A stretch of DNA of 64,000 nt from Haliotis cracherodii (lineage: Eukaryota), in assembly GCF_022045235.1 (NCBI RefSeq), contig NW_027266273.1:27838001-27902000 (forward strand), in the 5' to 3' direction. Below are positions 19,919 through 62,781 of this stretch, piece after piece. Below the pieces are notes generated by a model that saw only the letters and a list, made by a program, of their open reading frames with translations, was not told the origin of the DNA and made no database searches. Each line of letters starts with the position of its first letter. The first letter of the stretch is position 1. Position numbers and translations under genes: made by a program.

Positions 19919-22900
19919 CTATTTGTCAGATATGATCTGCCTTGCAATCAGCTCCTTCATGATTTCATTAGCACCCCCATAGATGGGCTGGACCCTGGAG
20001 TCCACGAAGGCGCGGGCGATAGGGTACTCCAGCATGTAGCCCCACCCCCCATGAAGTTGGACACACTGGGTGGCAATCTTCTGTTGCAGATCCGAAATCC
20101 TGCAACATGGAGAGTTACTACCATGCATCATACTCTCCACAGCACAGGTGAATATATATATATATATATATATATAGAAAAAGCACAGTAAAGTTCTAAC
20201 TCTAAGGCACAATATAATAATAATTAAATAAGTGCAGTAAGATTGAACACAGTTTTAATTGGCTAGCGCTTTCCACTCGTACCACATACGAGTCTCATCA
20301 GGCCATAACTGAATAACTACTTCATGTCCGTAGAACATGCGTGACTCATACGTGGTACGAGTGGAAAGCGCTAGCCAATTAAAATTGTTTTCAATCTTAC
20401 TCCACTTACTTAATTTTATATTAAATGTACAAAGAATAAAAAAAGAAGTTGCTACCCTTAAAAAGTGCCATGCATTCATGTTTTCCCAACTTCTAAATGC
20501 CTATCAAAGACTTCTCCACAGGTGGTGCACATACACCCAACATGTTTCAGTCACAATGATTTGTTTGGAGTGTTTGTTGTTTAACATCACATTCATCAAT
20601 ATTCAAGCCACATCATGGTTCCCTGGACAAAAGAGGGTCTGTACCATACCAACCAGTGATTTCTTTGAGTGGCATTTAGAAGTTGGGTGTGATGAAGTAA
20701 GACGAGTTCTATGGATGAACAACTTCTTTATTACAATTAGTGCGACGTTTCGGTGTAGATCCCAACACCTTTATCAAGCAAGTGATGATAAACTTGCTTG
20801 ATAAAGGTGTTAGGATCTACACCGAAACGTCGCACTAATTGTAATAAAGAAGTTGTTCATCCATAGAACTCTTCTTACTTCAACCAGTGATTGATATTAT
20901 GTGCACTGTCCGTCACACAAACTTACTAACACCCCATTTGTTCAATGTAGTCTGCAGCTCATCGGAATTCTGTTATATTTGCGATGTTTCAGTAATTTTC
21001 ACATGAAATTATTTACCACACAGCTGATATAAAGGTAAAGGCAGAAACTGGAACAAAATGTAACATGTATTAGCTAGTACCTCAACAAAGTGCAAAAATA
21101 AAACAGATAAAATTGCAGTTAAATGTTCATGTTCAAAATTGGTTTGGAATTCTGTGAGCAACTTTACAAGGCCACACAGCTGGGGTACTATCCTGTGCTG
21201 GAAGGAAGGGTGTTCTACTGACCAGTATTTAGGGCCATATTCTGTGAAGGAAGGTATGTTCTACTGACCAGTATTTAGGGCCATATTCTGTGAAGGAAGG
21301 TATGTTCTACTAACCAGTATTTAGGGCCATATCCTGTGAAGGAAGGTATGTTCTACTGACCAGTATTTGGGGTCATATCCTGTGAAGGAAGGAAGGTTTG
21401 TTCTACTGACCAGTATTTGGGGTCATATCCTGTGAAGGAAGGTTTGTTCTACTGACCAGTATTTGGGGTCATATCCTGTGAAGGAGGGAAGGTTTGTTCT
21501 ACTGACCAGTATTTGGGGTCATATCCTGTGATAGAAGGAAGGTTTGTTCTACTGACCAGTATTTGGGGTCATATCCTGTGAAGGAAGGTTTGATCTAATG
21601 ACCAGTATTTGGGGTCATATCCTGTGAAGGAAGGAAGGTTTGTTCTACTGACCGGTATTTGGGGTCATATCCTGTGAAGGAAGGAAGGTTTGTTCTACTG
21701 ACCGGTATTTGGGGTCATATCCTGTGAAGGAAGGAAGGTTGATCTACTGACCAGTATTTGGGGTCATATCCTGTGAAGGAAGGAAGGTTTGTTCTACTGA
21801 CCAGTATTTGGGGTCATATCCTGTGAAGGAAGGAAGGTTTGTTCTACTGACCAGTATTTGGGGTCATATCCTGTGAAGGAAGGTTTGATCTACTGACCAG
21901 TATTTAGGGTCATATTCTGTGAAGGAAGGAAGGTTTGTTCTACTGACCGGTATTTGGGGTCATATCCTGTGAAGGAAGGAAGGTTTGTTCTACTGACCAG
22001 TATTTGGGGTCATATCCTGTGAAGGAAGGAAGGTTTGATCTACTGACCAGTATTTGGGGTCATATCCTGTGAAGGAAGGTTTGTTCTACTGACCAGTATT
22101 TGGGGTCATATCCTGTGTAGAAGGAAGGTTTGTTCTACTGACCAGTATTTGGGGTCATATCCTGTGAAGGAAGGAAGGTTTGTTCTACTGACCAGTATTT
22201 GGGGTCATATCCTGTGAAGGAAGGTTTGTTCTACTGACCAGTATTTGGGGTCATATCCTGTGAAGGAAGGAAGGTTTGGTCTACTGACCAGTATTTGGGG
22301 TCATATCCTGTGAAGGAAGGTTTGTTCTACTGACCAGTATTTGGGGTCATATCCTGTGAAGGAAGGTTTGATCTACTGACCAGTATTTGGGGTCATATCC
22401 TGTGAAGGAAGGTTTGTTCTACTGACCGGTATTTGGGGTCATATCCTGTGATAGAAGGAAGGTTTGTTCTACTGACCAGTATTTGGGGTCATTTCCTGTG
22501 AAGGAAGGAAGGTTGATCTACTGACCAGTATTTGGGGTCATATCCTGTGAAGGAAGGAAGGTTTGTTCTACTGACCAGTATTTTGGGTCATATCCTGTGA
22601 AGGAAGGAAGGTTTGTTCTACTGACCGGTATTTGGGGTCATATCCTGTGAAGGAAGGAAGGTTTGTTCTACTGACCGGTATTTGGGGTCATATCCTGTGA
22701 AGGAAGGAAGGTTGATCTACTGACCAGTATTTGGGGTCATTTCCTGTGAAGGAAGGAAGGTTGATCTACTGACCAGTATTTGGGGTCATATCCTGTGAAG
22801 GAAGGAAGGTTGTTCTACTGACCAGTATTTGGCCATGGAGGCCATGCCATTGTCAAGCTTCCTCTTGTTGTGCAGCTCTAGACACTGATCAACAAATGCT

Positions 22901-25900: not shown

Positions 25901-28900
25901 CCAGCTTTATGACGGCGGTCTGTAAATAATCTAGTCTGGACCAGACAATCCAGTGATTGATATCATGAGCATCGATCCACGCAATTGGGATCAATGACAT
26001 GCAACCAAGTCAGCGATCCTGACCACCCGATCCCGTTAGTCGCCTCTTACGACAAGCATATTCGCCTTTTACGGCAAGCATGGGTTACTGAAGACCAATT
26101 CTACCCTGGATCTTCACGGGTCGGAAAGGACTACAGGACTAGTGCCAATATATAAGGCTGACTTAAGTCACTGAGCCTAACCACTTGTTCCCAGATGCTA
26201 TCTCTAATGATAAGCATGGTTACTTGCGTCCAAATTCCATCCCAGAATTCCCATGGGGTCTACAAAAGGTGACACATTCAAACTCATCCAGTCTTTCGAA
26301 CAATGGCATATTTTGTGATGGTATGTAATGTTAAAGCTTTAAAGAGGCACTCATCAGAAGCAACATGTCGGACATTTTCCCAAAGCAAGCATATCCACTA
26401 GCCTATATCAAGGCCTAGTTACTACCCTTGCCACACCAAGGCCACTTTTCTTGGCTCGACCCTGGCGCCACCTTGCATAGATCACAAGTTATGCCTCTTG
26501 TTATGAAAACGAGATATCCAATCAGATCGCTGTAGCTTCACAAAGATGGTGACTACCAAAGGCAACGACCTACCTAGTCGATCATATAACGAAAACATTC
26601 TCGATGTCATTCCTGACACAAAAATGTAGGCAATCTAAGGGGCGTCCAAAAGATGAAAAGACAAATTCGTGTAAACACAAACAGGCAGCAGTAAATCACT
26701 TTCATACCAAGGTGTACCAGTCGTGTACGTTGATTTTGTGAAACGTTCTCTGTTTGGAGATATGTGCGATAGTCCAACCATATTTACTACAGGAAAGTGG
26801 GCTTGATGTGGTAAGGGGGAAACAAGACTTTGATAAAAAGGCTAGTGGATGCTCTTGCCTCAGGAAGATGCTTGTCGGAGTGATTGGGTGTTATGATAGA
26901 GCTACATCAAACTTAGGCCTGATATACAAATACAGCAGTCCTCGGTTCCGTTCCACAAAGCGATTGTAGTGCTATGATCATCGAAACTCTCGTACTTTAA
27001 CATAGACTTAGAATGGTGGTAGCGCTATGCTCCCTTTGTGAAACGCGACTCTGTGCTCCATTTCACAAAGTGATTGTAAGGCTATGACTGGGAATGTATC
27101 AGAGTTACTAATTTTAAGGTCCTCATGGGCAATAGAAATTGAATCAAAGGGTCCCCTAAATCTGTATCTGTCTTAACATTAGGACCATGAAACTAACCCC
27201 TGACTTTCAAGTCTAATGATAGTACTACTCATGTCTATATAAGTAATCCACTTCATGTGGTACCAGTCTATGTAATGGTTACAGAGCAGTGCATGTTCCT
27301 CTGACAGTATCATTTCTTCTCCGGTTTAGGTACAAACTCACTGTTCTTCCCAGGTAATGGCTGTTGAGAGGACGTCGCCACCAATACCTCCCGCTGTCTC
27401 TGGAGTCTGAATGCCCAGCAACCCGTTTGTCCCAGCCTGTTCCCACACCTACAACACAGGCAAACAGTGTGAACACCCAGCAACCTGTGTGTCCCATCCA
27501 GTTCCCACACCAACAACACAGGCAAACAGTGTGAACACCCAGCAACCCGTGTGTCCCAGCCTGTTCCCACACCAACAACACAGGCAAACAGAGTGAACAC
27601 CCAGCAACCCGTGTGTCCCAGCCTGTTCCCACACCTACAACACAGGCAAACAGTGTGAACACCCAGCAACCCGTGTGTCCCAGCCTGTTCCCACACCTAC
27701 AACAAAGGCAAACAGTGTGAACACCCAGCAACCTGTGTGTCCCAGCCTGTTCCCACACCAACAACACAGGCAAACAGTGTGAACACCCAGCAACCCGTGT
27801 GTCCCAGCCTGTTCCCACACCAACAACACAGGCAAACAGTGTGAACACCCAGCAACCTGTGTGTCCCATCCAGTTCCCACACCTACAACAAAGGCAAACA
27901 GTGTGAACACCCAGCAACCCGTGTGTCCCAGCCTGTTCCCACACCTACAACACAGGCAAACAGAGTGAACACCCAGCATCCCATGTGTCCCATCCAGTTC
28001 CCACACCAACAACAAAGGCAAACAGTGTGAACACCCAGCAACCTGTGTGTCCCAGCCTGTTCCCACACCAACAACACAGGCAGAGAGTGTGAACACCCAG
28101 CAACCCTTGTGTCCCAGCCTGTTCCCACAGCTACAACACAGGTAGAGAGTGTGAACACCCAGCAACCCTTGTGTCCCAGCCTGTTCCCACACCTACAACA
28201 CAGGCAAACAGTGTGAACACCCAGCAACCTGTGTGTCCCAGCCTGTTCCCACACCAACAACACAGGCAGAGAGTGTGAACACCCAGCAACCCTTGTGTCC
28301 CAGCCTGTTCCCACACCTACAACACAGGCAAACAGTGTGAACACCCAGCAACCTGTGTGTCCCAGCCTGTTCCCACACCAACAACACAGGCAGAGAGTGT
28401 GAACACCCAGCAACCCTTGTGTCCCAGCCTGTTCCCACACCTACAACACAGGCAAACAGTGTGAACACCCAGCAACCTGTGTGTCCCAGCCTGTTCCCAC
28501 ACCAACAACACAGGCAGAGAGTGTGAACACCCAGCAAACTTTGTGTCCCAGCCTGTTCCCACAGCTACAACACAGGTAGAAAGTATGAACACCCAGCAAC
28601 CCGTGTGTCCCAGCCTGTTCCCACATAAACAACACATCAAATGTGTCGCCACACAAAGTTTGTGCATGTACACCAAAAATGAGAAATACAGTGAAAAAGA
28701 AAGAAAAGAATCTTGAGGACATTTTGGATGACAGTCAGTGTCCTAGCTAATGAAACAATGTGAAACCATGGGGGTCATGTCTTCCACCCCTGGTCCCAGG
28801 TGACTCCATGCCTTGCTACACTTAAAAGTAGGATCATCAGCCAGTAACTTTACAACGTAAGTACCAGCTATCATGACCGGACTGGAGCCATGCAGGGCAA

Positions 28901-32346: not shown

Positions 32347-35300
32347 ATGGTGAGACAATATTGTGTCGTCAGAATTACTGTGCTGTGTAGCATTTGGGAG
32401 CTTACAGGGTCATATGTTTCAGGAAAATATTGATGCAACAAGAGACATTATCGGTATACTATATGGTCTCTGATGCAAGTTGCAACCTACACAAGATTTA
32501 GATTTCTCATTTCTCTTACGAAGACTGGAATCAGAATGATAAATGGATGAGAGTTAGCCATGACTTAGTATTGTAGTATTTATACCCCATACAACATTCA
32601 ATACATTCAGTGTAATTTGTCAAAAGAAAATAGTGTTATTAATTTTAGTGTCCTTGATATAATGACCGAAAGTAGAAAGGGACAACTGTTCTTGCTGCAG
32701 TGTATGCCAATCACTCCAGTGAGTGAAGTAGTGTTAATCTCAGATATATATATATATATGAGAGTGATAAGCCTCAGCTGAAGTGTATGGAGCCGTCCGC
32801 TGCTCCCTTAAAGGCCGGGCATGGAGTCATCTCAGATCCTTTCATAGATGACATCCTTACCTTGTCAGTGTAGCAGGGCATGGAGTCATCTCAGATCCTT
32901 TCACAGATGACATCCTTACCTTGTCAGTGTAGCAAGGCATGGAGTCATCTCACAAATGACACCCTTACCTTGTCAGTGTAGCAGGGTGTGGAGTCATCCC
33001 ACAAATGACATCCTTACCATGTCAGTGTAGCAGGCCATGGAGTCATCTCAGATCCTTTCACAGATGACATCCTTACCTTGTCAGTGTAGCAAGGCATGGA
33101 GTCATCTCACAAATGACACCCTTACCTTGTCAGTGTAGCAGGGTGTGGAGTCATCCCACAAATGACATCCTTACCATGTCAGTGTAGCAGGGTGTGGAGT
33201 CATCCCACGGAGGACATCCTTGCCTTGTCAGTGTAGCAAGGCATGGTGTCATCCTACAGAGGACATCCTTGCATTGTCAGTGCAGCAGGGCTCGGTGTCA
33301 TCCTACAGAGGACATCCTTGCATTGTCAGTGTAGCAGGGCTTGGTGACTTGGTGACTCTGCTGGCTGTAAAAGGTGACTCTGCTGGCTGTAAAAGGTGAC
33401 TCTTCTTGCTGTAAAAGGTGACTCTGCTGGCTGTAAAAGGTGACTCTGCTTGCTGTAAAAGGTGACTCTGCTTGCTGTAAAATGTGACTCTGCTGGCTGT
33501 AAAAGGTGACTCTGCTTGCTGTAAAAGGTGACTCTGCTTGCCATAAAACATGATTCACCGATTCAATCACTTTATTTTCCAGGCGTCACCTACAAAAGAA
33601 ACGATCTTGGCCACAGCTAGGAAATTCATCTCTTTCATCAATAAATGTCCATCTCCATTTCACGGTCAGTGGAACTAGAAATTAGGCGTTCAAACATTTC
33701 TGGATAGTTCCTTGTTATCAATCATTCCAAGCACATTCATTCTTTTATGGTTTCAAACAGCCCATCGTTAAATGTCCTATTGTGAAGTCGACTGTATGGG
33801 GCTGTTGTATATTTTGGGACCAGGGCCACATTTCACAAAGCGATCCAAGTGCTAAGGTGATCACTCCTCCCATACTTTAACATAGATTAAGGACAACAGT
33901 AGACCTACAATTGCTTTGTGGAATGGGGCCCTGCAATGCCTAGTTCTGGAGTGTCCTGTGATGTCCCACGCAGTAAGCCCTGTAGGGAGCTGGTTAATTG
34001 GGCTTAACTCTGTTGCTTGTCATGGAGGACAATTAACTTGGATCAGGTGGAAAGAACTTAACACTAGCCCACTAGCCCAGGGCTAGTACACATTCCTGCA
34101 GAATGGTACAAATTCCAAGTTTCCCCATTGTGTTAACATTACGAGAGCACTTTATCTCTACTGGGGCTAGTAACGTTATTGAGCTAATTCTAACCCTGCT
34201 TGGTGTGTTATGGGGCATCGTACATTGGGCCAACAGAGTGGAATGATGCTCATTATATCAACCACTGGATTATCCAGTTCAGATTATTGTTTATAGGTCA
34301 CTGTGACATAGCTGGAAACGTGCTTGCTGCAGCATTCAACTAAACAAACTTTACACCTGTCTGTGAGTTACATGTGTCACGAACATGGTGTGCAGGCGTT
34401 TACAACCTGAACAATCTCATTAAAATTAGACCTTAGTTCTCGCTACCGCTTAACAAAGATCTGAAGACATCCCATTAGGGGTCACGTCAGAACGATCTTT
34501 CATCCAACTAATCAGAGCGTCGCTTACCAGATTATGAAAGTGACAGTCGGATTGTGATTTCTAATCATGCAACCTCGAAAACTTTAACATGGGGTATTCC
34601 AAACGATAGTTACGGGTTTAACGACTGAATTCTTACAATCTAGAACATCTATTAGCCATTCCAGAATGTTTTTTGTGTTCAGGTTTCAAATTTGTAAGCA
34701 AGAATTTGTCAAAATACGTTTCAAAGTGTAGTCGCCAATTTGAAATTAGTGCAGTAAAAGACGAGAGAGCTGCCTTCTGATTGGTCATTCCATTGGTCGA
34801 TCAAAGTTCGCGCAAGGTCGGTCTGACGTGACACGTAATGGGATGTCCTCAGATCTTAGTTTAGCGGTAGCAAGAACTAAGATCTGATTTTAATGAGATT
34901 GCAATCTGAACGCACGAGGGCTGCAATGAATACGCTAAGAGGAGAATATGATTCGTATCATGTATATAGGGTAACATATAGAATATTAATTCACAAATTA
35001 AATAACAAGTCAGAAGTTGATGTATTATTTGTCATATTCAGCGAAACAATAACAACATAAATTATTTGACATCGTTTGTTAATTATCAATATATTGTACA
35101 TTCATATACTGCACTTATGCAGGTACTAGTATCTGCTCAAATGTGACAATGACCAGTGACCACAATTACCGAATTCAATTCATGAATGGTTACGGTTCGA
35201 TGCACCGAATATGTGAGTGAATCGTAACAGCCCACTTGACACATGCAATACATTAATCTTATGTTCTCAAGTACAAAGACTTCTAACATATGGTTATTTG

Positions 35301-38300
35301 ATAATAGATCTGCTTTATGACCGCCGGTGGTTACAGCATGATAACGCAAATGTCAACAGGCCAAGTATGACGTGACAAGCAAATGACGTCATTTGAAAGA
35401 CAATGATGTCTTGATGTCCGTTCAGGGCGGTTGACCGACTTGTATTGGTTTTAACAAGATGCAAACTGGCCAATCAGATAGCAGGATTTTATTTTGATTA
35501 ACTATAAAGATATGTGACGGATCGGGTGGTCAGATTGACCGACGTGGTCGTTGCATCGTGTCCCAATTGTGTAGATTGATGCTCATGATGTTAGTCAGTG
35601 GATTGTTTGGTCCACACTTTATTATTTAAATACCTGAGTCAAATCGATGGAATATTGCACAGTGCGGCATTAAACAAACAAAACAAAACAAACACTGAAG
35701 ATGATTGTTTACTGCAGCTGTGGAGGAAGTGAGGCAGAGGCTGGTGGCTGCTGGATTCAAGGAGCTGAGGGATGCGGAACGCTGGTCCATCAAACCAAAC
35801 AACAAGGTATGGGGCATAGGGAACATGGAGAATTTCCAACAAAAACAGAACAAACTAAATCCGCTTGTTTTGATCAGGTGTTGTGGCACCACTAGCAACA
35901 TGCTGTGTGAAAATACATGATGTGCCATCTTCCTGAGTGCAAGGGAGTTAACTGACTATAACAGTTCAGTTTCCACCCTTGCTGAACTAGGCTGGAATTA
36001 TGGAGTTCAAATTTGGCTGGACTAACGAATCTATGCATAGTCCTGTCAAAATCGTGTCACAAAATTGACTTATGGTTTGTAAACTGTCATAAAGATTTTG
36101 GTCAATTGCAGGATTTGCAAAGCATGTGAACCATCTACCTAGCGTGGCCAGATATTTTCCAAATCTTTCCATGTGTTTAGTCAAGGTGCTCACGTGATTT
36201 GATGCACTTTGCAAAGTTAGACCTGTTTTATTACAACATAGATCTTGATTATCGATCAGATTGTCATGACTGGGTGCCATCTTTTTGTGTGAAGCAAAGG
36301 CAAGTGTTCATAGAGGTGGAATCTGATTGGTCAATATGAGAGACATAAAAGGGGCATAACTCGTAATAGCCACTGGTGGCACAACGATCAAGCCAAGAAA
36401 TTCCAGCCTTGTTCAGCAAGGGTGGAAACGTTTACAGTCAGTTAACTCCCTTGCCTCTGAAAGATGAACTACACCAACATGAACTAGAAATCATGATAGC
36501 AGTGATACTGAGAAATTAGTGCATCATCCATACAGACTTTCATTAATCAGTGCCTACAAAAGGTCAACAGCATAGAGTGTCCGCCCCAGAGAGAGGGAAG
36601 GTCCGGGATTCGGCTCGGAGTCAGTATACTGTGTCTGAGTGGGGTATTCATGTTAAACTGCGGCATGGTATCTCAGTGAGCTAGCACTATAAATCGGCAT
36701 CAGTCCAGACTAGTACAAGCAGCCACACACACACACGTGCATGCACGTCGCTATATAAGTGCTATAATCTTGGACGCGACGGTAACCCAATTTCACCTCA
36801 CTTCAACAGCAGAACAAATAACTCTAATTGTAGATTTGCTGTGCCTGCCCTATAGCAACCCTCTCAGAAAAGTGTTGTTGAATTCGTGTTCAGGAAGGAA
36901 AGTAGACAAATGATGCAGCAATCATTAAATTAATGATGTTACTTCTTTCTTCTGCATCTTGTTAAATGAGATCCACTTTCCAAAACCATCTCAACTAGTT
37001 TGTCATGAAACATTTGTAGATTTTGTCAGCATGATGACTGTTATGTTGCGTGTTTCAGTATGTTTCAGATAATGATGAATGTTATGTTGTGTGTTTCAGT
37101 ATGTTTCAGATAATGATGAATGTTATGTTGTGTGTTTCAGATAATGATGACTGTTATGTTGCGTGTTTCAGTATGTTTCAGTATGTTTCAGATAATGATG
37201 AATGTTATGTTGTGTGTTTCAGTATGTTTCAGATAATGATGAATGTGATGTTGTGTGTTTCAGTATGTTTCAGATAAGGATGAATGTTATGTTGTGTGTT
37301 TCAGATAATGATGACTGTTATGTTGTATGTTTCAGTATGTTTCAGATAATGATGAATGTTATGTTGTGTGTTTCAGTACTTTGTCACCAAGAATCAGTCC
37401 ACCATCATTGCCTTTGCCGTCGGGGGACAGTACAAGCCAGGGAACCCATTCAGCATTGTTGGGGCTCACACCGACAGCCCTTGTTTCAAGGTACACTTGT
37501 CGTATAGTATCAGGTCAGTGTTGTAATCAGACAGCTCTTGCTTCAAGGTACACTTTTCATGTAGCATCAGGTCAGTGTTGTAATCAGACAGCTCTTGCTT
37601 CAAAGTACACTGGCCACTTGTCACATAGCATCAGGTCAGTGTTGTAATCAGACAGCTCTTGCTTCAAAGTACACTGGCCACTTGTCACATAGCATCAGGT
37701 CAGTGTTGTAATCAGACAGCTCCTGCTTCAAGGTACACTTGTCACATAGCATCGGGTCAGTGTTGTAATCAGACAGCGCTTGCTTCAAGGTACACTTGTC
37801 ATATAGCATCAGGTCAGTGTTGTAATCAGACAGCTCTTGCTTCAAGGTACACTTGTCACATAGCATCAGGTCAGTGTTGTAATCAGACAGCTCTTGCTTC
37901 AAGGTACACTTGTCACATAGCATCAGGTCAGTGTTGTAATCAGACAGCTCTTGCTTCAAAGTACACTGGCCACTTGTCACATAGCATCAGGTCAGTGTTG
38001 TAATCAGACAGCTCTTGCTTCAAAGTACACTGGACACTTGTCATATAGCATCAGGTCAGTGTTGTAATCAGACAGCTCTTGATTCAAAGTATACTGGACA
38101 CTCGTCATATAGCATCAGGTCAGTGTTGTAATCAGACAGCTCTTGCTTCAAAGTACACTGGCCACTTGTCACATAGCATCAGGTCAGTGTTGTAATCAGA
38201 CAGCTCTTGCTTCAAGGTACACTGGCCACTTGTCACATAGCATCAGGTCAGTGTTGTAATCAGACAGCTCTTGCTTCAAGGTACACTGGCCACTTGTCAC

Positions 38301-41300
38301 ATAGCATCAGGTCAGTGTTGTAATCAGACAGCTCTTGCTTCAAGGTACACTGGACACTTGTCATATAGCATCAGGTCAGTGTTGTAATCAGACACCTCTT
38401 GCTTCAAGGTACACTGGACACTTGTCACATAGCATCAGGTCAGTGTTGTAATCAGACAGCTCTTGCTTCAAAGTACACTGGCCACTTGTCACATAGCATC
38501 AGGTCAGTGTTGTAATCAGACAGCTCTTGCTTCAAGGTACACTTGTCACATAGCTTCGGGCGGTTTGGATGATCTGGTATTCTAGTGGTTAAAGTGTTTG
38601 CTCGTCACGCCGATGAGCCGGGTTTGATTCCCGACATGGGTACAGTGTGTGAAGCCCATTTCTGGAATATTGCTAAAAGCGGCGTAAAACCATACTCACT
38701 CACTCACTCACTCACTCAGGTCAGTGTTGTAATCAGACAGCTCTTGCTTCAAAGTACTGTGGTCACTAGTTTTAACAATCAGCTCAATGTTGTAAAGTTT
38801 TTTAATGCAATCGTGGATATCCAGGTAATATATTTTTTGCAGGTGAAGCCCATCTCTGGGAGGGTGAAGAGTGGCTACTGTATGGTAGGAGTGGAGCCAT
38901 ACGGTGGGGGAATCTGGCACACCTGGATTGATCGTGACCTGACAGTGGCAGGCCGAGTCCTGGTCAAGGTGAGTCTCTGGTCCAACTGTGTGATGGAATT
39001 TGATCCAACCCTGGAAGGACCTTGGTCCAACACAAACAAGTAACTGAATGTATGTGTAGCCAGTACAAGCTGGGCCACTCTCCCAGTAACTGTATGTATG
39101 TGTAGCCAGTACAAGCTGGGTCACTCTCCCAGTAACTATGTATGTGTAGCCAGTACAAGCAGGGCCACTCTCCCAGTAACTGTATGTATGTGTAGCCAGT
39201 ACAAGCTGGGTCACTCTCCCAGCAACTGTATGTATGTGTAGCCAGTACAAGCAGGGCCACTCTCCAAGTAACTGTATGTATGTGTAGCCAGTACAAGCAG
39301 GGCCACTCTCCCAGTAACTGTATGTATGTGTAGCCAGTACAAGCAGGGCCACTCTCCCAGCAACTGTATGTATGTGTAGCCAGTACAAGCTGGGCCACTC
39401 TCCCGCTAACTGTATGTATGTGTAGCCAGTATGAGCTGGGCCACTCTCCCGCTAACTGTATGTATGTGTAGCCAGTACGAGCTGGGCCACTCTCCCGCTA
39501 ACTGTATGTATGTGTAGCCAGTACGAGCTGGGCCACTCTCCCGCTAACTGTATGTTTATGCCAGTATGACAAAGATACCGACGTGTGCAATGTTTCAGGA
39601 GGGGGATAAGATCAACCATCACCTTGTGCACGTCCAGCGCCCGATCCTGAGGATTCCCAACCTGGCCATCCACTTGCAGAGGGAGATGAACGACAGCTTT
39701 GGACCCAACAAGGAGAACCATCTGTAAGTAGCAGCAGAGGAGGAGGGCCCACGTACACATCCTGGTGTCCCCTCACGTCACCTTGGTACACATCCTGGTG
39801 TCCCCTCACATCACCTGGGCCCACGTACACATCCTGCTGTCCCCTCACATCACCTGGGTACACATCCTGGTGTCCCCTCACATCACCTGGGTACACATCC
39901 TGGTGTCCCCTCACATCACCTGGGTACACATCCTGGTGTCCCCTCACATCACCTGGGTACACATCCTGGTGTCCCCTCACATCACCTGGGCCCACGTACA
40001 CATCCTGGTGTCCTCTTACATCACCTGGGCCCACGTACACATCCTGGTGTCCCCTCACATCACCTGGGCCCACGTACACATCCTGGTGTCCCCTCACATC
40101 ACCTGGGCCCTCGTACACATCCTGGTGTCCCCTCACATCACCTGGGCCCTTGTACACATCCTGGTGTCCCCTCACATCATCTGGGCCCACGTACACATCC
40201 TGGTGTCCCCTCACATCACCTGGGCCCTTGTACACATCCTGGTGTCCCCTCACATCACCTGGGTACACATCTTGGTGTCCCCTCACATCACCTGGGCCCT
40301 CGTACACATCCTGGTGTCCCCTCACATCACCTGGGCCCACGTACACATCCTGGTGTCCCCTCACATCACCTGGGTACACATCCTGGTGTCCCCTCACATC
40401 ACCTGGGCCCTCGTACACATCCTGGTGTCCCTTCACATCACCTGGGTACACATCCTGGTGTCCCCTCACATCACCTGGGCCCACGTACACATCCTGGTGT
40501 CCCCTCACATCACCTGGGTACACATCCTGGTGTCCCCTCACATCACCTGGGTACACATCCTGGTGTCCCCTAACATCACCTGGGCCCTCATACACATCCT
40601 GGTGTCCCCTCACATCACCTGGGCACTCTCCTGCTTGTCTTAAAGAGCAATCATGTTTGATTGTTTGACTTGTAATCAGACCTGACTGTGGAGGATGATG
40701 GTCATTCTTTCAGTAAATGATAGACGTGGACCAGAGTTTGTTATTTTCAGACACCAGTGGCTTAAGACGTCATTTATAAACACCTGTCCGCATTTTCATG
40801 ACAGATTGTTGTTTGATGTATTGCTGATCTTGTGACTATCGTGTTTAAACATGTGTGACCGGTATGATTGTATTATAGGATACAATTTTATCATGAATGT
40901 TCTGGTGAGCTATGGAGTTGTATTTAACCGCCATGACCTAGGTGAAGGGTTATTGGCAAGTTCCTCTGCCATGTCCGCTGATAGTTGTCGTTTGTTTGCA
41001 GGTGCCCCGTGATCGCCTCAGCCGTACAGTCAGAGTTGCAAGGCCTCCCGAAACAGTCCGAGGCTGACGTCACACAGAAAACTCAGGTACAAGGCAACAT
41101 CTCTTCCCAGTCGTCATAGGCGACGTGATTTGCTGTGCTGAGTCGCGTCCCTTGGGCCTGCCAGAAACCTATGATTGTGGGTCCGAATCCCAGTTCGCCT
41201 GGATTATGTTTGTAGGTTTTTCAAACCATACCCATATTCTAGGGTTTCACCAAAGTTGTTAACATCTGAGACCTGCATCATTTCAGGTTTTCCTCCAATA

Positions 41301-44300: not shown

Positions 44301-46407
44301 ATGAGAGATGACAGGTGTCGGTACAGGTGTTTGATGAAGGGTGAGAGATGACAGGTGTCGGTACAGGTGTGTGATGAAGGGTGAGAGATGACAGGTGTCG
44401 GTACAGGTGTGTGATGAAGGATGAGAGATGACAGGTGTCGGTACTGGTGTGTGATGAAGGGTGAGAGATGACAGGTGTCGGTACAGGTGTGTGATGAAGG
44501 GTGAGAGATGACAGGTGTCGGTACAGATGTGTGTTGAAGGGTGATAGATGACAGGTGTCGGTACAGGTGTGTGATGAAGGGTGAGAGATGACAGGTGTCG
44601 GTACAGGTGTGTGATGAAGGGTGAGAGATGACAGGTGTTGGTACAGGTGTGTGATGAAGGATTATAGATGACAGGTGTCGGTACAGGTGTGTGATGAAGG
44701 GTGAGAGATGACAGGTGTTGGTACAGGTGTGTGATGAAGGGTGAGAGATGACAGGTGTTGGTACAGGTGTCAGTACAGGTGTTTGATAAAGGGTGAGAGA
44801 TGACAGGTGTCGGTACAGGTGTGTGATGAAGGATGAGAGATGACAGGTGTTGGTACAGGTGTGTGATGAAGGGTGAGAGATGACAGGTGTTGGTACAGGT
44901 GTCGGTACAGGTGTGTGATGAAGGGTGAGAGATGACAGGTGTCGGTACAGGTGTGTGATGAAGGGTGAGAGATGACAGGTGTTGGTACAGGTGTGTGATG
45001 AAGGATTATAGATGACAGGTGTCGGTACAGGTGTGTGATGAAGGGTGAGAGATGACAGGTGTTGGTACAGGTGTGTGATGAAGGGTGAGAGATGACAGGT
45101 GTTGGTACAGGTGTCGGTACAGGTGTTTGATGAAGGGTGAGAGATGACAGGTGTCGGTACAGGTGTCGGTACAGGTATTTGATGAAGGGTGAGAGATGAC
45201 AGGTGTCGGTACAGGTGTGTGATGAAGGGTGAGAGATAACACTACAGGTGAAAGTTGAGAGACTGACGAACAAAACATTTGCAATACTGCATGAAGAAGA
45301 TAACGTGGGTATCAATGTTAACATGTTTAAATACTGGAACTTGGACCCAGGTTTCAAGGATATATCAGTGCTGCAATAGATGATATGTAACAACAGTCAT
45401 TGTGCAAAGATTGTATTGCGGTACAGGGTGCTGGTCAGCTATTGGGTAGTATCCACAGGACGAGCAGATTTTTGAAGGTTTGAACAACACTATAGACAGT
45501 GATGATGTGTAATTCACAGGACATCGTGGTAAGAAACGACTCTCCGTGCGGGTCGACTATCGGTCCTATCATGTCCGCCAAGCTGGGGATGCAGACCATA
45601 GATGTTGGGGCGCCACAACTCAGCATGCACTCCATCCGGGAGATGGGATGCACATCCAGCGTCCACCAGGCCATTGTGCTCTTCCAGGTCTGTTTGTTTG
45701 TTTGTTTGTTGTTTAACACCGCACTCAGCAATATTTCGGCTATATGACAGTGGTCTGTAAATAATCAAGTCTGGCCCAGACAATCCAGTGATTGATATCA
45801 TCAGCATCGATCGACGCTTCAGGATACGATGACATGCATCAATTAAGTCAGCGAGCCTGATCACTCGAGTCCGTTAGTCGCCTCTTACCACAAGCATATT
45901 CTTCCAGGTTAATTGGCGCTTCACACAGTTTAATCCAATACAAGACGTATCTGCATAATATCTGACAAACCCTGCATAGCGACCAGTCATCCTGAAGGCA
46001 TGGACATGTGTTCATGCTTTCAACCACTGGTTTGCTCGATCTTTTGCTGATTGATGTGGCTGTCATATTGCTGACTAAGGCACAAAACAAGATTGGCACA
46101 ATCACTCTCTCACTCACTAACAATCTCACTCACTCATCCACACTCACCCGCTCTTCCACACTCACTCACTCATTCACTCACACTCACTCCCAGACACACA
46201 CACACACACACACACTCTCATCCACCCACCCTTTCACGCACTCACTAAATCACTCACTCATCCTACCACTCACTCACTCCCTCAGCCACCCACTCACTCA
46301 CTCACACACTTACCCACTCAACTTTTTCACTCACTCATCCAACCACCCACACTCTCCCTCACCAACTCTCTCCCTTTCTCACTTATCCACCCACTCACTC
46401 AAAAAAC

Positions 46408-46456
<49 letters not shown>

Positions 46457-46680
46457 ACTTACCCACTCAACTTATTCACTCACTCATCCAACCACCCACA
46501 CTCTCCCTCACCAACTCTCTCCCTTTCTCACTCACCCACCCACTCACTCAAACAAAAAACACTCATTCACGCACGCACGAACGCATCCACCCAACCATCC
46601 ACTTACTCACTCACTCACTGTTGCTGTTGCAGGGTTTCTTTGAGCACTACCCTGCTGTGGCTGCCTCCCTCAACTTCTAG
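32347..46680 (+). CDS. DNPEP: Aspartyl aminopeptidase, peptidase family M18 (15 coding exons, 469 aa)
   Basis: Exons 32347-32349 (ATG only, donor GTGAGA; inferred), 33583-33664, 35718-35806, 37377-37490, 38843-38968, 39599-39723, 41002-41086, 41690-41797, 41932-42009, 42696-42776, 43265-43425, 43714-43753, 43919-44020, 45520-45687 and 46633-46680, all phase-consistent. M18 motifs [64 protein letters not shown] and LSMHSIRE. Confidence 0.96.
32816..33541. repeat. Two abutting minisatellites (about 46-58 bp and 22 bp units) in DNPEP intron 1
   Basis: GCATGGAGTCATC...ATGACATCCTTACCTTGTCAGTGTAGCAGG units run to about 33345, then GGTGACTCTGCTGGCTGTAAAA units to 33541. Confidence 0.92.
34412..34901. 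mobile_element. MITE with about 85-bp TIRs
   Basis: CAATCTCATTAAAATTAGACCTTAGTTCTCGCTACCGCT... pairs with ...AGCGGTAGCAAGAACTAAGATCTGATTTTAATGAGATTG. Confidence 0.85.
35926..36466. mobile_element. MITE with about 70-bp TIRs (CATCT...AGATG family)
   Basis: CATCTTCCTGAGTGCAAGGGAGTTAACTGACT... pairs with ...AGTCAGTTAACTCCCTTGCCTCTGAAAGATG. Partial or deleted copies at about 80-445, 12946-13035, 16547-16625 and 18650-19060. Confidence 0.85.
36572..36800 (+). mobile_element. SINE-like family D
   Basis: Core GAGTCAGTATACTGTGTCTGAGTGGGGTATTCATGTTAAACTGCGGCATGGTATCTC, shared in inverted orientation with about 5480-5770, 16185-16335 and 24945-25245. Confidence 0.7.
37032..37378 (+). repeat. 31-41-bp minisatellite ending in, and copying, the DNPEP exon 4 acceptor
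   Basis: Unit ATAATGATGAATGTTATGTTGTGTGTTTCAG(TATGTTTCAG). The final TTTCAG|TAC is the real acceptor. Confidence 0.92.
37473..38757 (+). repeat. 57/64-bp minisatellite, about 18 copies, spanning the DNPEP exon 4 donor
   Basis: Unit GACAGCTCTTGCTTCAAG|GTACACTTGTCACATAGCATCAGGTCAGTGTTGTAATCA, compared with the real junction GACAGCCCTTGTTTCAAG|GTACACTTGTC. Confidence 0.95.
38558..38717 (+). mobile_element. SINE family A inserted within a minisatellite unit
   Basis: Splits the unit as ...CACATAGCTTC | SINE | AGGTCAGTGTTGTAATC. Confidence 0.85.
39040..39566. repeat. 46-bp minisatellite, about 11 copies, in DNPEP intron 5
   Basis: Unit AACTGTATGTATGTGTAGCCAGTACAAGCTGGGCCACTCTCCCAGT. Confidence 0.95.
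39745..40624. repeat. 33/39-bp minisatellite in DNPEP intron 6
   Basis: Unit GG(GCCCAC)GTACACATCCTGGTGTCCCCTCACATCACCT, starting 21 nt after the donor. Confidence 0.95.
42041..42662. repeat. 42-bp minisatellite, about 15 copies, filling DNPEP intron 9
   Basis: Unit TGAGTGTCACCCAGAGCTAGTTGTAAGGAAGGTATCCTGAAA. Confidence 0.95.
44029..45237. repeat. 40-bp minisatellite, about 30 copies, starting 8 nt after the DNPEP exon 13 donor
   Basis: Unit TGACAGGTGTCGGTACAGGTGTGTGATGAAGGGTGAGAGA. Confidence 0.95.
45690..45899 (-). mobile_element. SINE-like family B inserted at the DNPEP exon 14 donor
   Basis: 10-bp TSD TCTTCCAGGT (45680-45689 and 45900-45909). Confidence 0.85.
46102..46619. repeat. Compound (CACT)n/(CA)n microsatellite adjoining the last DNPEP acceptor
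   Basis: Degenerate CACT and CA runs ending about 13 nt before the exon at 46633. Confidence 0.9.
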
Positions 46681-58703: not shown

Positions 58704-59004
58704 TTCCCGTTTACGACGTAATAAGCGCCCAGAACGCTCTCAAAATTAGTTGAAAGATAAATTTTGTGGTTTATGCTGACAGCCTGAAATGTTATATACG
58801 ACAGATATATTTTTCCAGAATTTAATTGCCCATGATTAAGTGTGCATATAACACACAAGTGCGTATTATACACGAATAAATAAATCTTGTATACATTGAT
58901 CAATCGGAAGCTGTGCTAATTGAGATTGTTCAATAGCAAATATATCAGCAAGTAATGCTGTGGGCGCTTATTAGTGCGGGGCGCTTATTACATCGAATAC
59001 GGTA
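58704..59004. mobile_element. pogo-like MITE
   Basis: CCGTTTACGACGTAATAAGCGCCC pairs with GGGCGCTTATTACATCGAATACGG. Confidence 0.65.
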
Positions 59005-59218
59005 ATTAGTGTTTGGTGTAACAGATATTTAAGCAGACAGTTAAGGTGAGAATCAATATTTATTGCTTTGTGTGTGACTGTGATCAATACTTGTATTGAG
59101 AAGTAAAATATCGCGATCCGTTGATACATAGGTGCATCATCCCACTACTTGCCCACAGTAACATCCAAACAGTTAACAGTTATGTGGGAGACAAGGTAAT
59201 GATTTCATTGTAATGCAT

Positions 59219-59773
59219 CAGAGCTCTAGATAAGCTTTTGCTTATTTGGGTATTTTACCCAGGGGTTTGATTTTGATTGGGTATCCACAATTTTTAGTCG
59301 GTATTCAAAAAATATTTACCCACCTGTTTCTTGACATTTGGGTATTTTAACTTGAAAACCTGTTTCCTAACAATCCCTTTAAATCATTTCGAACTATATG
59401 AATAGAAGTAATTTCGTCTGCGTCTGCGTGCGGCATCTTCTACGGGAAGTTGTTTTTGTTTGTAAAACCAAGCATTGTAAAAAAGGCACTATGTCTTTAA
59501 TCACCAATCAGCGACTGTTTAAAATACAACTTTTACATCATGTACATTGTGCGATGTGCTTTTCAATTGCCATCTATCAGTATGTTTCTTGCACAAGCTT
59601 TGTTGAATATTGGTTGATACACAATCATTTTATATAACAGTTGTTAGTATACACATTAATTTTATTTCAATAGCGTATTTATAGTTTTTCTTGCATATTT
59701 GATACCCTAGGTTTTGATTTGTCTATTTAATATATATTATTTTATGCAAATATGCAGCTTATCTCGAGCTCTG
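59219..59773. mobile_element. MITE of the CAGAGCT..AGATAA family
   Basis: CAGAGCTCTAGATAAGC ... GCTTATCTCGAGCTCTG; inverted homologue of 55106-55586. Confidence 0.8.
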
Positions 59774-59933
59774 ATGCTTCCATCATTCTAAGTATAGAAA
59801 TGCTCCAACGATTTGTGTGTGACCAGAAAGCATTACAGTAATCCAAGGTGATCTGTCTCGGTGTACATTAATGTATGAGCAGGTGCCCTCTCTATCATGA
59901 GTCTGTCTCAGTGACCCTGGGCCTTGGTTTACA

Positions 59934-62191
59934 ATGACAAGCCACCCATGTGGAGCTGCTTGGCTTGTGTGGAGCTGCATGGAGCCGTGTTACTCGGGAA
60001 TGGAGGGGCTCCTGTGGGGGTCTGCCCCCTGCAGTATGAAGCACCGTCTCAACTGGTGAGAAGGACACCCCATGCATGTCTGTCTGTCCAGGACACCCCA
60101 TGTATGTCTGTCTGTTCCAGGACACTCCATGTATGTATGTTTGTCTGTTCCAGGACACCCCATGTATGTATGTCTGTCTGTTCCAGGACACCCCATGTAT
60201 GTCTGTCTGTTCCAGGACACCCCATGTATGTATGTCTGTTCCAGGACACCCCATGTATGTATGTCTGTCTGTTCCAGGACACCTCATGCGCTGTCCTTCA
60301 CCTGGAATGACGAGACCGGGGCAGGGGCGGGAAAGAGGACCAAGACGTCCCACACCAGCTCCCACTCCACTACCAGCACCACCAACACCACCAGCCTCAG
60401 CTCCTGGGACATCGACGGGGGACTTGCTGCAGACTTTGACGGATCACTTTCAGGCCTGGGAACGGAGTTGGGGACCTCTAGCTACAACATGAGGTGGGAA
60501 GTCATAACATTACACTTATATTACTTTCCTAACTGAAGCCTAGTCCAAAAATGTTTGAGCCTCATAGCCCGAACATGGCTCTAGCATCTTTTGAGTTGAG
60601 TCTTTTGTTATCATATGGACTATTATAAGCTGAGCTTTCTGAAGCAGACAGAAATTTCTGAGGTTTCTGACTAGTGGTAGAAATTACAGATTGTAACTGC
60701 AGTTTTATTTTATTTATTTATTCAGGCATAAAATTATTTGCTTACACCAAACATGATGAATTCAAACATGTCAATAAGATGTTTTCCTGCAGTGGAATCA
60801 GTCAAACCCTCATCTGGATTTCTGTATATTTTGGTATTTATTATGTAATCAAGTGAAAACTGTCTCATTCGGAATTTTCACACTGCAGAGTCCACAAGTA
60901 AAATGTTGAACAATAGACATAAAAAACTGTAAAACGTGAAATTAATGCGTCTCCAAAAGAATCCGACCGCTAGCCCCTAGCCAAAAATGCGACTCAATAT
61001 AAATGCGACACCCCCTCCTCTCAAGCATCAGTTGATTTATATCTAAACAAAATGTCCTCTGTCAGGTTTACAGGAGAATCCTCACCTTAATCCAACCTTA
61101 CATTAATCAAATCACACACCAAATAGCACCGCGTATTAGCGCTGAGTAGAGCACTTCAGCTAAAACAATACGTGCGCGCTTGCTCGTGTCGGCCTTTGAT
61201 GCAGTCGCAAAGAACAAACACACCGTGTTGGGTGGCGTTTGTCTGGACTTGCAGGTGTGATCAGTGATGACATGAGTGAGTAGAATGCTTGTCTTGACCC
61301 CAGCAGTGACAATTCACAGGATTAATTAATAATTAATAATTAGTGTTTGAATGACATTGTTTATAGACTTGTAACACGTGCTGCTCAATAAACAGTGATG
61401 TGGAATACATAGTTGTTTGTTTTCAGCGTATGTCTAAGTTGGTATTTCTGCTATCCAAAATGTCTTATTGTTGATATATAAATGCGATGTTTTATAATGC
61501 GAGCAAAGACCACTCGCATTTTTCGCATTTAATACACGCTCGCGTTAATATCAAGATTTACAGTATGTCATGCAATGGGCAGCTGGGTGCTCCCTTATCT
61601 GGATGAGCTTGACCAGTTATGTAAGTTGTCAGACAAATCTCACGCCTGCCATATCAGCTGAACAGACCAAAGCGATCTTAGCCCTAAGATCGTAACTCTC
61701 ATACCTTAACACAGACTTACGACAGTCGTAGCGCAAAGGTTGTTTTGTACAACAGCACACTGGTGTTTGCAGCAGAGACTGGTACTCCTGAGAATGGCCT
61801 TCACTCAGCGGTAACGCTGCATTGGTGATAGGGGCAGTTGGTAGCCTAAGGGGCAGTGGTTAAAGCATTCCACATATGTGTGAAGCTCATTTCTTGTGTT
61901 TTGGGTGCTGTGATATTGCTGGAATAATGCTGAATGGTGTCAAACCATACTCACTCACCCATTGATGATAGAACGGTATTCAAGCCGTGAGTCTAGTAAC
62001 ATAAATTTTCTTGTTTGAGGATAACTGAGAGCAGTTTCTAGAATGATGTTCGCAATCACACATACATGTACAGTCCATGTTAACACAGCTGCATTTGAAC
62101 AAGAAAAGCAACTCACACTAAAGAATGATTTCTGTTACAGCGAAGCTCTCCTGGCTCTTCCAGTGTTTAAACAAGAAAATCTTGAAAGCGG
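59934..62191 (+). CDS. TFCP2: CP2/LSF-family transcription factor (TFCP2/UBP1/gemini-like), N-terminal exons; gene continues beyond the right edge
   Basis: Exons 59934-60055, 60278-60493 and 62141-62191 (all phase 2) give ...[42 protein letters not shown], matching the TFCP2/UBP1 N-terminal motif (GLVQDFDASLSGIGQELG...YSMSDVLALPIFKQE as recalled). The start ATG is uncertain; 59934 is the first ATG after an in-frame stop. Confidence 0.85.
60063..60289 (+). repeat. 28-33-bp minisatellite, 7 copies, forming almost the whole TFCP2-like intron and copying its acceptor
   Basis: Unit GACACCCCATG(TATG)nTCTGTCTGTTCCAG; the exon begins GACACCTCATGC. Confidence 0.93.
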
Positions 62192-62254
62192 GTAAGTCGT
62201 AAAGTAATTCTGTATCACAAGTTCCTAGTTCACTAGTACTTTTGATTGTAATAT

Positions 62255-62781
62255 GTTTCTCCCTGCCATGATAGGGGTGGATTAATCATCGGTTTCTCCC
62301 TGCCATGGTAGGGATGGAATAATCATCGGTTTCTCCCTGCCGTGATAGGGATGGAATAATCATCGGTTTCTCCCTGCCATGGTAGGGGTTGAATAATCAT
62401 CGGTTTCTCCCTGCCATGTTAGGGATGGAATAATCATCGGTTTCTCCCTGCCGTGATAGGGATGGAATAATCATCGGTTTCTCCCTGCCATGGTAGGGGT
62501 TGAATAATCATCGGTTTCTCCCTGCCATGATAGGGATGGAATAATCATCGGTTTCTCCCTGCCGTGATAGGGATGGAATAATCATCGGTTTCTCCCTGCC
62601 ATGGTAGGGGTTGAATAATCATCGGTTTCTCCCTGCCATGGTAGGGGTTGAATAATCATGTTTCTCTTTGCCGTGATAGGGATGGAATAATCATCAGTTT
62701 CTCCCTGCCATGTTAGGGATGGAATAATCATCGGTTTCTCCCTGCCGTGATAGGGATGGAATAATCATTGGTTTCTCCCTG
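62255..62781. repeat. 37-bp minisatellite, about 14 copies, starting about 63 nt after a TFCP2-like donor
   Basis: Unit GTTTCTCCCTGCCATGATAGGGATGGAATAATCATCG. Confidence 0.95.

What the first reader, a model, noticed from the sequence alone, without database searches (positions are those of the whole stretch)
21181..62781. Splice-junction-anchored minisatellites: unrelated tandem arrays repeatedly seeded at exon boundaries in three genes
Seen: at least eleven intronic arrays with mutually unrelated units (22-64 bp) all begin or end within about 0-65 nt of an exon. In five of them the unit is a copy of the junction itself: the ACADL exon 8 donor, the ACADL exon 4 acceptor, both sides of DNPEP exon 4, and a TFCP2-like acceptor. 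Long introns here (5.3 kb in KANSL1, 2 kb in DNPEP intron 2) have no large mid-intron arrays, and only one large array (16622) is intergenic. Each unit derives from local sequence, so this is not a transposed satellite family. Inference: a process acting at exon edges (for example splicing- or R-loop-coupled slippage, nucleosome-boundary breaks, or rolling-circle copying and reinsertion of small local circles) amplifies junction DNA, and selection retains only arrays that grow into the intron. I know of no described system with this regular pattern, but cannot search the literature.
Basis: partly seen in the sequence, partly recalled or inferred. Interest (0 to 1): 0.9.

Follow-up and report, generated by a model that had tools for sequence, protein, structure and literature searches.

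The report
Splice-junction minisatellites in abalone introns
Introns of this mollusc genome are packed with tandem repeats that start at, or copy, the gene's own splice sites; this repeat type ("mirage") is known from lancelets and one human gene, but here repeat edges sit on splice sites far more often than even placement predicts.

Summary
TRF finds 14 large arrays in the window, and 11-12 of them end within 65 nt of an exon of ACADL, DNPEP or a TFCP2-like gene. Five are built from copies of a splice junction. RNA contigs show that DNPEP is spliced at the outermost copy, so the arrays are removed with the intron.

The claim of "no described system" is wrong. Junction-spanning minisatellites are the "mirages" of amphioxus and the human F7 intron-7 VNTR. 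Four earlier follow-ups of this scan reported them elsewhere in this same (abalone) genome.

- **Window alone:** closeness to exons is not significant once intron length is controlled (P 0.05-0.13).
- **Independent sample:** I picked eight genes in advance, giving 74 introns and 32 arrays. Arrays make up 24% of their intron bases.
- **Arrays abutting a junction:** edges lie 0-9 nt inside the intron 8 times, against 0.4-0.5 expected (P about 1e-8).
- **Controls:** density is flat beyond 30 nt, and transposon edges show no such peak.
- **Arrays reaching into the exon:** these occur only at about the chance rate.

The cause of the junction bias is not established.

The parts
21181..22832 (-). ACADL intron 8 donor array: 33 units of 50 bp. 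The outermost unit is the real end of exon 8 (exon ends at 22823) plus the 5' splice site.
   Evidence: Exon-side homology p=0.005. GT kept in 34 of 34 junction-like sites.
27414..28636 (-). ACADL intron 3 acceptor array: about 20 units of 62 bp, each 27 nt of intron end plus 35 nt of the start of exon 4. The real exon 4 is 27448-27342.
   Evidence: Exon-side score 43 against a null maximum of 22. AG kept in 10 of 20 copies.
37031..37378 (+). DNPEP acceptor array: 8.5 units of 41 bp, each holding the pyrimidine tract, AG and 2 exon bases. It ends at the acceptor of exon 37377-37490.
   Evidence: RNA contigs splice 35806 to 37377, which is the last acceptor copy.
37494..38543 (+). DNPEP donor array: 16 units of 64 bp, each with a copy of the last 18 nt or so of the exon plus the GT donor.
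   Evidence: GT kept in 16 of 16. RNA contigs splice 37490 to 38843, which is the first donor copy.
39039..39555 (+). Ordinary intronic minisatellite (46 bp x 11) that fills a 630-nt intron. It lies 70 and 43 nt from the exons and holds no exon sequence.
   Evidence: Unique to this locus in the genome. The intron is confirmed by RNA contigs.
39745..40628 (+). Intronic minisatellite (39 bp x 23) starting 21 nt after the donor at 39723.
   Evidence: The intron 39724-41001 is confirmed by RNA contigs.
42041..42662 (+). Intronic minisatellite (42 bp x 15) filling a 686-nt intron that would be about 104 nt once the array is collapsed. It is near both exons by default.
44029..45241 (+). Intronic minisatellite (40 bp x 30) starting 8 nt after the donor at 44020. 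The unit holds donor-like motifs.
   Evidence: Mostly local; weak matches of 70-77% identity at three other loci.
46111..46613 (+). TCAC-rich, low-complexity array ending about 19 nt before the acceptor of the last DNPEP exon (46633).
33351..33548 (+). 22 bp x 9 array ending 34 nt before the acceptor-like site of the first mapped DNPEP coding exon (33583-33664), and directly before an in-frame ATG. The exon or intron status upstream is not verified.
60062..60288 (+). TFCP2-like intron 1 (222 nt), made almost entirely of about 7 acceptor copies. AG is kept in 7 of 7, and the last copy overlaps exon 2 by 11 nt. The exon model is inferred from the reading frame only.
   Evidence: (p=0.005). The CP2 domain exons lie beyond the end of the window.
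62255..62789 (+). 37 bp x 14.5 array starting 63 nt after the donor at 62191 of the TFCP2-like gene. The other end of this intron is outside the window.
16624..17515 (.). Intergenic 29-bp array. It belongs to a dispersed satellite family and is not a junction array.
   Evidence: arrays of the same unit at 65-80% identity at more than 25 loci on many contigs.
32817..33344 (.). 49/157-bp array between ACADL exon 1 and DNPEP, with no mapped exon next to it.

Best explanation
These are local-origin intronic minisatellites. Part of them are the 'mirage' kind, and they sit in a genome with a very large load of such repeats.

**How they form (inferred).** Each array began as a tandem duplication of 20-100 bp. 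One end of that duplication lay across a splice junction (the unit then holds exon end plus splice site) or within a few nucleotides of it on the intron side (the unit then holds the donor motif or the pyrimidine tract). The array then grew by replication slippage or unequal exchange.

**Why they are harmless.** All extra copies lie on the intron side by geometry. The spliceosome uses the outermost copy, meaning the first donor or the last acceptor, so the mRNA is unchanged. This is shown for DNPEP and inferred for ACADL and the TFCP2-like gene.

**The junction bias (shown).** Array edges are about 16-22 times denser in the first 10 intron nucleotides next to a junction than the mean over all intron positions.

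**Its cause (inferred).** I favour a mutational bias of the founding duplication at the splice-signal sequences over selection or erosion of flanks.
For: - Arrays and exon map.
- Units contain exon sequence: (ACADL introns 3 and 8, DNPEP intron 3, TFCP2-like intron 1; in the independent genes PGI intron 9, aconitase intron 2, lyase a intron 4, lyase b introns 1 and 4).
- Splicing at the outermost copy. GT..AG joints 35806>37377, 37490>38843, 38968>39599 and 39723>41002 appear in mRNA-like contigs of three runs.
- Local origin.
- Repeat load: arrays make up 24% of intron bases in eight genes chosen in advance and 32% in the window genes; 23 of 74 introns carry an array.
- Junction peak: 8 edges at 0-9 nt against 0.37-0.50 expected, P 2e-9 to 2e-8. 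In strictly mapped introns it is 5 against 0.25-0.37, P 3e-6 to 2e-5.
- Within-intron test: 8/11/14 edges within 10/20/30 nt against 2.3/4.5/6.2 expected after repeat masking, P 2e-4 to 6e-4.
- Density is flat at 0.13-0.32 per kb from 30 nt to beyond 1 kb.
- Control: interspersed-repeat edges show no peak, ratio 1.3.
- Array-bearing and array-free introns have similar unique length, medians 606 and 648 nt.
- Literature: mirages (PMC3087553, PMC3902484); first-donor scanning at F7 (PMC1557585); a PCR-verified polymorphic 27-bp x 62 intronic minisatellite in another abalone (PMC6905558).
Against: - In the window itself the closeness to exons is not significant once intron length is controlled.
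- Junction-spanning arrays are no commoner than position-blind duplication predicts (4 by coordinates, 5-6 by homology, against 3.7-4.7 expected).
- The independent sample is small: 8 genes and 32 arrays.
- 23 of the 74 introns have one end, or a possible missed exon, placed by score only.
- Unrecognised later insertions could inflate the collapsed intron lengths.
- Array copy numbers were not checked against long reads.
- ACADL and TFCP2-like splicing was not checked with RNA.
- No ancestral, array-free sequence was available to read the founding breakpoints.
Confidence: 0.7

Rival explanations
1. Position-blind origin. Tandem duplications arise anywhere in introns, and arrays look junction-anchored only because the ancestral introns were short and units are long (20-100 bp). 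Later insertions lengthen the far side.
For: - The window-only test is not significant (4/5/6 edges within 10/20/30 nt against 1.8/2.9/3.8 expected, P 0.05-0.13).
- Introns 38969-39598 and 42010-42695 collapse to about 160 and 104 nt.
- Spanning arrays occur at the neutral rate.
Against: - Independent genes show a peak confined to the first 10-20 nt, with a flat density from 30 nt outward.
- A short-intron effect would spread evenly over 0-50 nt. Instead 8 of the 11 edges within 0-30 nt lie within 10 nt (P=0.013).
- The unique length of array-bearing introns is like that of array-free ones.
- Transposon edges show no peak.
Confidence: 0.15
2. Selected function. The arrays are kept because multiplied donor motifs, branch sites or pyrimidine tracts help or regulate splicing of the neighbouring exon.
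For: - Donor copies keep GT in every unit: 34/34, 16/16, 18/18, 92/92, 23/23 and 36/36.
- Acceptor-side units supply the pyrimidine tract of the real site.
Against: - Intact copies are equally expected from recent amplification and homogenisation.
- The units are unrelated between genes.
- Half of the ACADL acceptor copies have lost AG.
- No alternative joints into the arrays were seen in the listed joints of three RNA runs.
- Amphioxus and F7 studies report no effect on normal splicing (PMC3087553, PMC1557585).
Confidence: 0.08
3. Flank erosion. Arrays arise anywhere and act as sinks for deletions. The unique DNA between array and exon is lost until the essential splice signals stop further loss.
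For: The peak lies on the intron side only, at +2 to +8 from donors and 4 to 18 nt before acceptors. That is where selective constraint begins.
Against: - Erosion should act on both sides of an array, yet the far flank is usually hundreds of nt long.
- Units next to the junction carry the junction's own motifs, which points to seeding there.
Confidence: 0.05
4. Assembly artefact or transposed satellite family.
For: - The intergenic array 16624-17515 belongs to a dispersed family.
- Two interior arrays of the independent genes share a dispersed unit.
- Copy numbers were not checked with long reads.
Against: - Junction arrays have no non-local matches.
- DNA contigs of a related organism have depth in the array bins, and RNA contigs skip the arrays exactly at GT..AG.
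- Units differ by 1-20%, unlike collapsed or inflated artefacts.
- A comparable abalone intron array was verified by PCR and cloning (PMC6905558).
Confidence: 0.02

Closest known systems
'Mirage' minisatellites of amphioxus (Adh3, globins BflGb6/9, TnC, PGBD5; Canestro et al. 2002 as cited in PMC3087553, and PMC3902484)
   Same: They are tandem arrays whose unit spans an exon-intron boundary. Both 5' and 3' boundaries occur, units are 10-160 bp, many copies keep AG/GT, and normal splicing is unaffected. The mechanism is stated to be unclear.
   Different: This is another phylum (a mollusc, per earlier scan notes). The arrays are much longer, up to 92 copies. The load is quantified here at 24-32% of intron bases. 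There is also an extra and larger class of arrays that abut the junction from the intron side without holding exon sequence.
Human F7 intron 7 37-bp VNTR (PMC1557585)
   Same: The first unit spans the exon 7 donor, identical functional pseudo-donors follow it, and only the most upstream site is used. DNPEP here likewise uses the first of 17 donors.
   Different: F7 is a single locus with few copies. Here the pattern recurs in most of the genes examined.
Intron gain by tandem duplication of a segment containing AG|GT (the Rogers model; PMC3265369, PMC2891723, PMC4974935)
   Same: A tandem duplication duplicates splice signals, and the spliceosome removes what lies between them.
   Different: No new intron is created here. 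The duplications sit at existing junctions and are amplified into arrays.
Polymorphic intronic minisatellite of Haliotis discus hannai TSSK1-like intron 3 (27 bp x 62; PMC6905558)
   Same: It is an abalone intronic minisatellite with a similar unit size and copy number, verified by PCR and cloning.
   Different: The paper does not relate the array to a splice junction.

Membership tests
Mirage minisatellite (junction-spanning tandem array) | Head-to-tail array of three or more similar units | tested here: met
   TRF: 8 to 33 copies in the five window arrays.
Mirage minisatellite (junction-spanning tandem array) | The unit holds both exon sequence and the adjoining intron sequence with the splice site | tested here: met
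   Exon-side homology test and unit listings. Met for 21181-22832, 27414-28636, 37494-38543 and 60062-60288. Marginal (2 exon bases) for 37031-37378. Not met for 39039, 39745, 42041, 44029 and 62255.
Mirage minisatellite (junction-spanning tandem array) | The outermost copy is the authentic junction and the extra copies lie in the intron | tested here: met
   Coordinates of exons against arrays.
Mirage minisatellite (junction-spanning tandem array) | Normal splicing is retained despite the decoy sites | tested here: met
   Met for both DNPEP arrays: GT..AG joints at the outermost copies in three RNA runs. Not tested for ACADL or the TFCP2-like gene.
Mirage minisatellite (junction-spanning tandem array) | Length instability or polymorphism | not tested
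   The single read-laying run was used on contigs, which cannot give copy number.
Dispersed satellite or transposon-borne tandem repeat | The same unit is found in arrays at many unlinked loci | tested here: not met
   Not met for the junction arrays (weak matches only). Met for the intergenic array 16624-17515, which is therefore filed separately.

The most novel reading that the evidence does not exclude
A process tied to the splice junction itself seeds minisatellites at intron ends in this lineage. Candidates are breaks or template switches at the ends of spliced-RNA:DNA hybrids, and slippage between splice-signal motifs. This would make exon-intron boundaries mutational hotspots for tandem duplication, with array edges roughly 20-fold enriched in the first 10 intron nucleotides.
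Probability: 0.3. Interest if true: 0.75.

Novelty: new member of a known kind. Interest (0 to 1): 0.45.

Why it matters
Up to 92 intact donor sites in tandem, all ignored except the first, amount to a natural, many-times-repeated version of the human F7 experiment on how the spliceosome picks a site.

A quarter to a third of intron DNA in ordinary housekeeping genes being minisatellite is an unusual genome property. It bears on gene prediction, read mapping and marker design in abalone.

If the sharp peak of array edges at splice junctions holds genome-wide, it would make the unexplained origin of 'mirages' testable. It would point to a junction-linked mutational process. Comparing array-bearing and array-free orthologous introns among closely related abalone species could then reveal the founding breakpoints.

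Tried and rejected
- **Fetching more genes failed.** The independent sample therefore stayed at eight genes, and the last TFCP2-like intron has no known end.
- I replaced it with coordinates counted from earlier tool output and checked them for AG/GT.
- **Boundary extension.** Gapless period-shift extension of array ends missed diverged edge units. I replaced it with TRF on both strands plus gapped extension. Edges are still uncertain by about 5 nt.
- **Purging of decoy sites rejected.** This would have explained why arrays stop just inside the intron, but donor copies keep GT in all units.
- **Lariat or rolling-circle RNA origin rejected.** It cannot explain the spanning arrays, whose units hold up to 52 nt of exon, and some units (21-28 bp) are too short for a lariat loop. 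This is inference only.
- **Gene names.** Pfam found nothing in the two large KANSL1-like reading frames, so that gene name rests on resemblance recalled from memory. The ACADL orthology (as opposed to the acyl-CoA dehydrogenase family) also rests on memory.
- **Paper not held.** The 2002 amphioxus paper (PMC117041) is not in the library. I cite it through PMC3087553.
- **Organism name.** The name was coded. 'Abalone' comes from earlier scan notes and was not verified here.
- **Joined model.** Exons were searched by reference one at a time. A joined ACADL reading frame was translated inside one script only to count stop codons.
Full report
**What is in the window.** The window is G000:C10:27838001-27902000 of a 1.18-Gb animal genome. 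Earlier notes of this scan call the genome an abalone; I did not verify the name. TRF finds 14 large arrays with units of 22-64 bp.

**Exon maps.** I mapped three genes.
- ACADL lies on the minus strand with nine coding exons. All have AG/GT boundaries, and the reading frame is 443 codons without a stop. Two exons hit the acyl-CoA dehydrogenase middle and C-terminal domains.
- DNPEP lies on the plus strand with 14 mapped exons (Peptidase_M18 hits; frames). One of these is an inferred 40-nt micro-exon.
- The 5' end of a TFCP2-like gene is present; its CP2-domain exons lie beyond the window.

**RNA evidence.** mRNA-like contigs of 1.9-2.2 kb from three RNA-type runs of closely related organisms give GT..AG joints at 35806>37377, 37490>38843, 38968>39599 and 39723>41002. 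DNPEP therefore uses the last acceptor copy of the array 37031-37378. It uses the first of 17 donor copies at 37490 and removes the array 37494-38543 with the intron. DNA contigs of a relative have depth inside the array bins, so the units are not private to this assembly.

**The observation.** Eleven to twelve arrays end within 65 nt of a mapped exon.

Four units contain exon sequence by a homology test against 190 control exon ends.
- ACADL intron 8 donor: 10 nt of exon by coordinates.
- ACADL intron 3 acceptor: 27 nt of intron plus 35 nt of exon.
- DNPEP intron 3 donor: about 18 nt of exon.
- TFCP2-like intron 1 acceptor: 11 nt of exon.

The DNPEP intron 2 unit copies the acceptor with 2 exon bases. 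Donor copies keep GT in 34/34 and 16/16 units. Acceptor copies keep AG in 10/20, 6/6 and 7/7. The arrays at 32817-33344 and 16624-17515 are not next to an exon. The latter belongs to a satellite family with arrays at more than 25 other loci.

**Comparison with what is known.** Tandem repeats that span an exon-intron boundary were named "mirages" in amphioxus Adh3. They were later found in amphioxus globin, troponin C and PGBD5 genes. Those studies report that both boundaries can be duplicated, that normal splicing is kept and that the mechanism is unclear (PMC3087553, PMC3902484). The human F7 intron 7 VNTR has its first unit across the donor, and only the most upstream of several identical functional donors is used (PMC1557585). 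A polymorphic 27-bp x 62 intronic minisatellite has been cloned from another abalone (PMC6905558). Four earlier follow-ups of this scan reported mirages on other DNA of this same genome.

I collapsed each array to one unit. I then asked where the founding duplication could have started if all positions of the collapsed intron were equally likely, including positions that span a junction.
- The window has nine arrays in 23 introns.
- Edges within 10/20/30 nt of a junction number 4/5/6, against 1.8/2.9/3.8 expected (P 0.05-0.13).
- Two introns collapse to about 100-160 nt and are near exons by default.

The window alone gives no significant evidence of anchoring.

**The same test in independent genes.** I chose long, low-copy Pfam families in advance: Phosphorylase, PGI, Aconitase, V_ATPase_I and Lyase_1. 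I located their exons in the genome and fetched eight genes, 164 kb in all. Splice junctions were placed from the continuity of HMM coordinates, the reading frame and GT/AG scores. Arrays were called with TRF on both strands, and interspersed repeats were masked by self-BLAST. The results were as follows.
- There are 74 introns, 51 of them strictly mapped; 23 carry arrays, and there are 32 arrays in total.
- Arrays make up 24% of intron bases.
- Edges within 10/20/30 nt of a junction number 8/11/14. Expected values are 1.8/3.6/4.9 raw and 2.3/4.5/6.2 after masking (P 2e-4 to 6e-4).
- Over all array-collapsed intron positions, edge density is 5.4 per kb at 0-10 nt, 1.35 at 10-20 and 0.68 at 20-30. 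It is then flat at 0.13-0.32 per kb out to more than 1 kb.
- That is 8 edges in the first bin against 0.37-0.50 expected (P 2e-9 to 2e-8). In strict introns it is 5 against 0.25-0.37 (P 3e-6 to 2e-5).
- Edges of 116 interspersed-repeat blocks show no such peak, with a ratio of 1.3.
- The unique length of array-bearing introns (median 606 nt) matches that of array-free ones (648 nt).
- Of the 11 edges lying 0-30 nt inside an intron, 8 lie within 10 nt (P=0.013). A short-intron effect would not predict this.
- Donor and acceptor sides are equally affected, 11 and 11 in the pooled data.

**A nuance.** Arrays that reach into the exon, the true mirages, number 4 by coordinates and 5-6 by homology, against 3.7-4.7 expected. 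They are about as common as position-blind duplication predicts, given the enormous array load. The excess lies in arrays that abut the junction from the intron side. Their units carry the donor motif or the pyrimidine tract of the real site. About half of all arrays lie far from any junction, and two of those share a dispersed unit.

**How it most likely works.**
- Shown: the junction arrays are of local origin, splicing uses the outermost copy (for DNPEP), and edges are enriched at junctions.
- Inferred: each array started as a tandem duplication with one end at or near a junction and grew by slippage or unequal exchange.
- By geometry, the extra copies lie in the intron, so no selection on "growth direction" is needed.
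- Tolerance fits 5'-to-3' donor scanning as shown for F7, and fits exon definition for acceptors.

**Why edges sit on junctions is open.** Two-sided erosion of flanks is unlikely, because the far flank is usually long. Purging of decoy sites is not seen. An intron-RNA (lariat) origin cannot explain units that contain exon sequence. I favour a mutational bias at the splice-signal sequences. Selection and unrecognised later insertions remain possible.

**Limits.**
- The independent sample is small.
- 23 of its 74 introns are placed by score only or may hide a missed exon. That makes the test conservative for interior arrays but leaves proximal edges uncertain by some nucleotides.
- Array edges are uncertain by about 5 nt.
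- There was no long-read check of copy number.
- There was no RNA check for ACADL or the TFCP2-like gene.
- Gene names beyond the Pfam family rest on memory.

**Verdict.** The phenomenon belongs to a known kind (mirage minisatellites) in a lineage where the published literature I could search does not describe it, and this scan has already met it four times in this genome. The new result is a quantified, sharp excess of array edges at splice junctions in genes chosen in advance. It deserves a genome-wide test.

Noticed in passing
window 16624-17515 (also 17696-17762): The 29-bp intergenic array belongs to a dispersed satellite family. Arrays of the same unit, at 65-80% identity, occur at more than 25 loci on many contigs.
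   Followed up: partly
L017-L019 (gene coordinates 18160-18582) and L030 (600-1111): Two interior intronic arrays, in the glycogen phosphorylase gene and a V-ATPase a-subunit gene, share a dispersed unit of about 51-53 bp. They are probably transposon-borne tandem repeats.
   Followed up: no
window 46111-46613; L023-L024 (aconitase gene, array ending 4 nt before an acceptor): TCAC-rich low-complexity arrays abut acceptors and seem to serve as, or extend, the pyrimidine tract.
   Followed up: no
window 43714-43753: An inferred 40-nt DNPEP micro-exon is needed to keep the reading frame between exons 43265-43425 and 43919-44020. It was not checked with RNA.
   Followed up: partly
window 35900-36900, 38500-38700, 41100-41500: Interspersed repeats with very high contig depth in all four runs laid. 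One family has more than 1000 candidate copies in the genome.
   Followed up: no
L020: 301-453 and 947-1144 (C33:1555030-1555182 and 1555676-1555873): Two PGI exon hits cover overlapping HMM ranges (19-69 and 42-109). This may be a duplicated exon part or alternative exons.
   Followed up: no
window 9545-10819 (-) and 3288-4241 (-): The two large reading frames taken for KANSL1 or KANSL1L exons have no Pfam match above threshold. The 5.3-kb gap between them holds no array, but small exons in it cannot be excluded.
   Followed up: partly
L008 (C15:9857818-9857979): A weak second Peptidase_M18-like hit lies on another contig (E 0.58).
   Followed up: no
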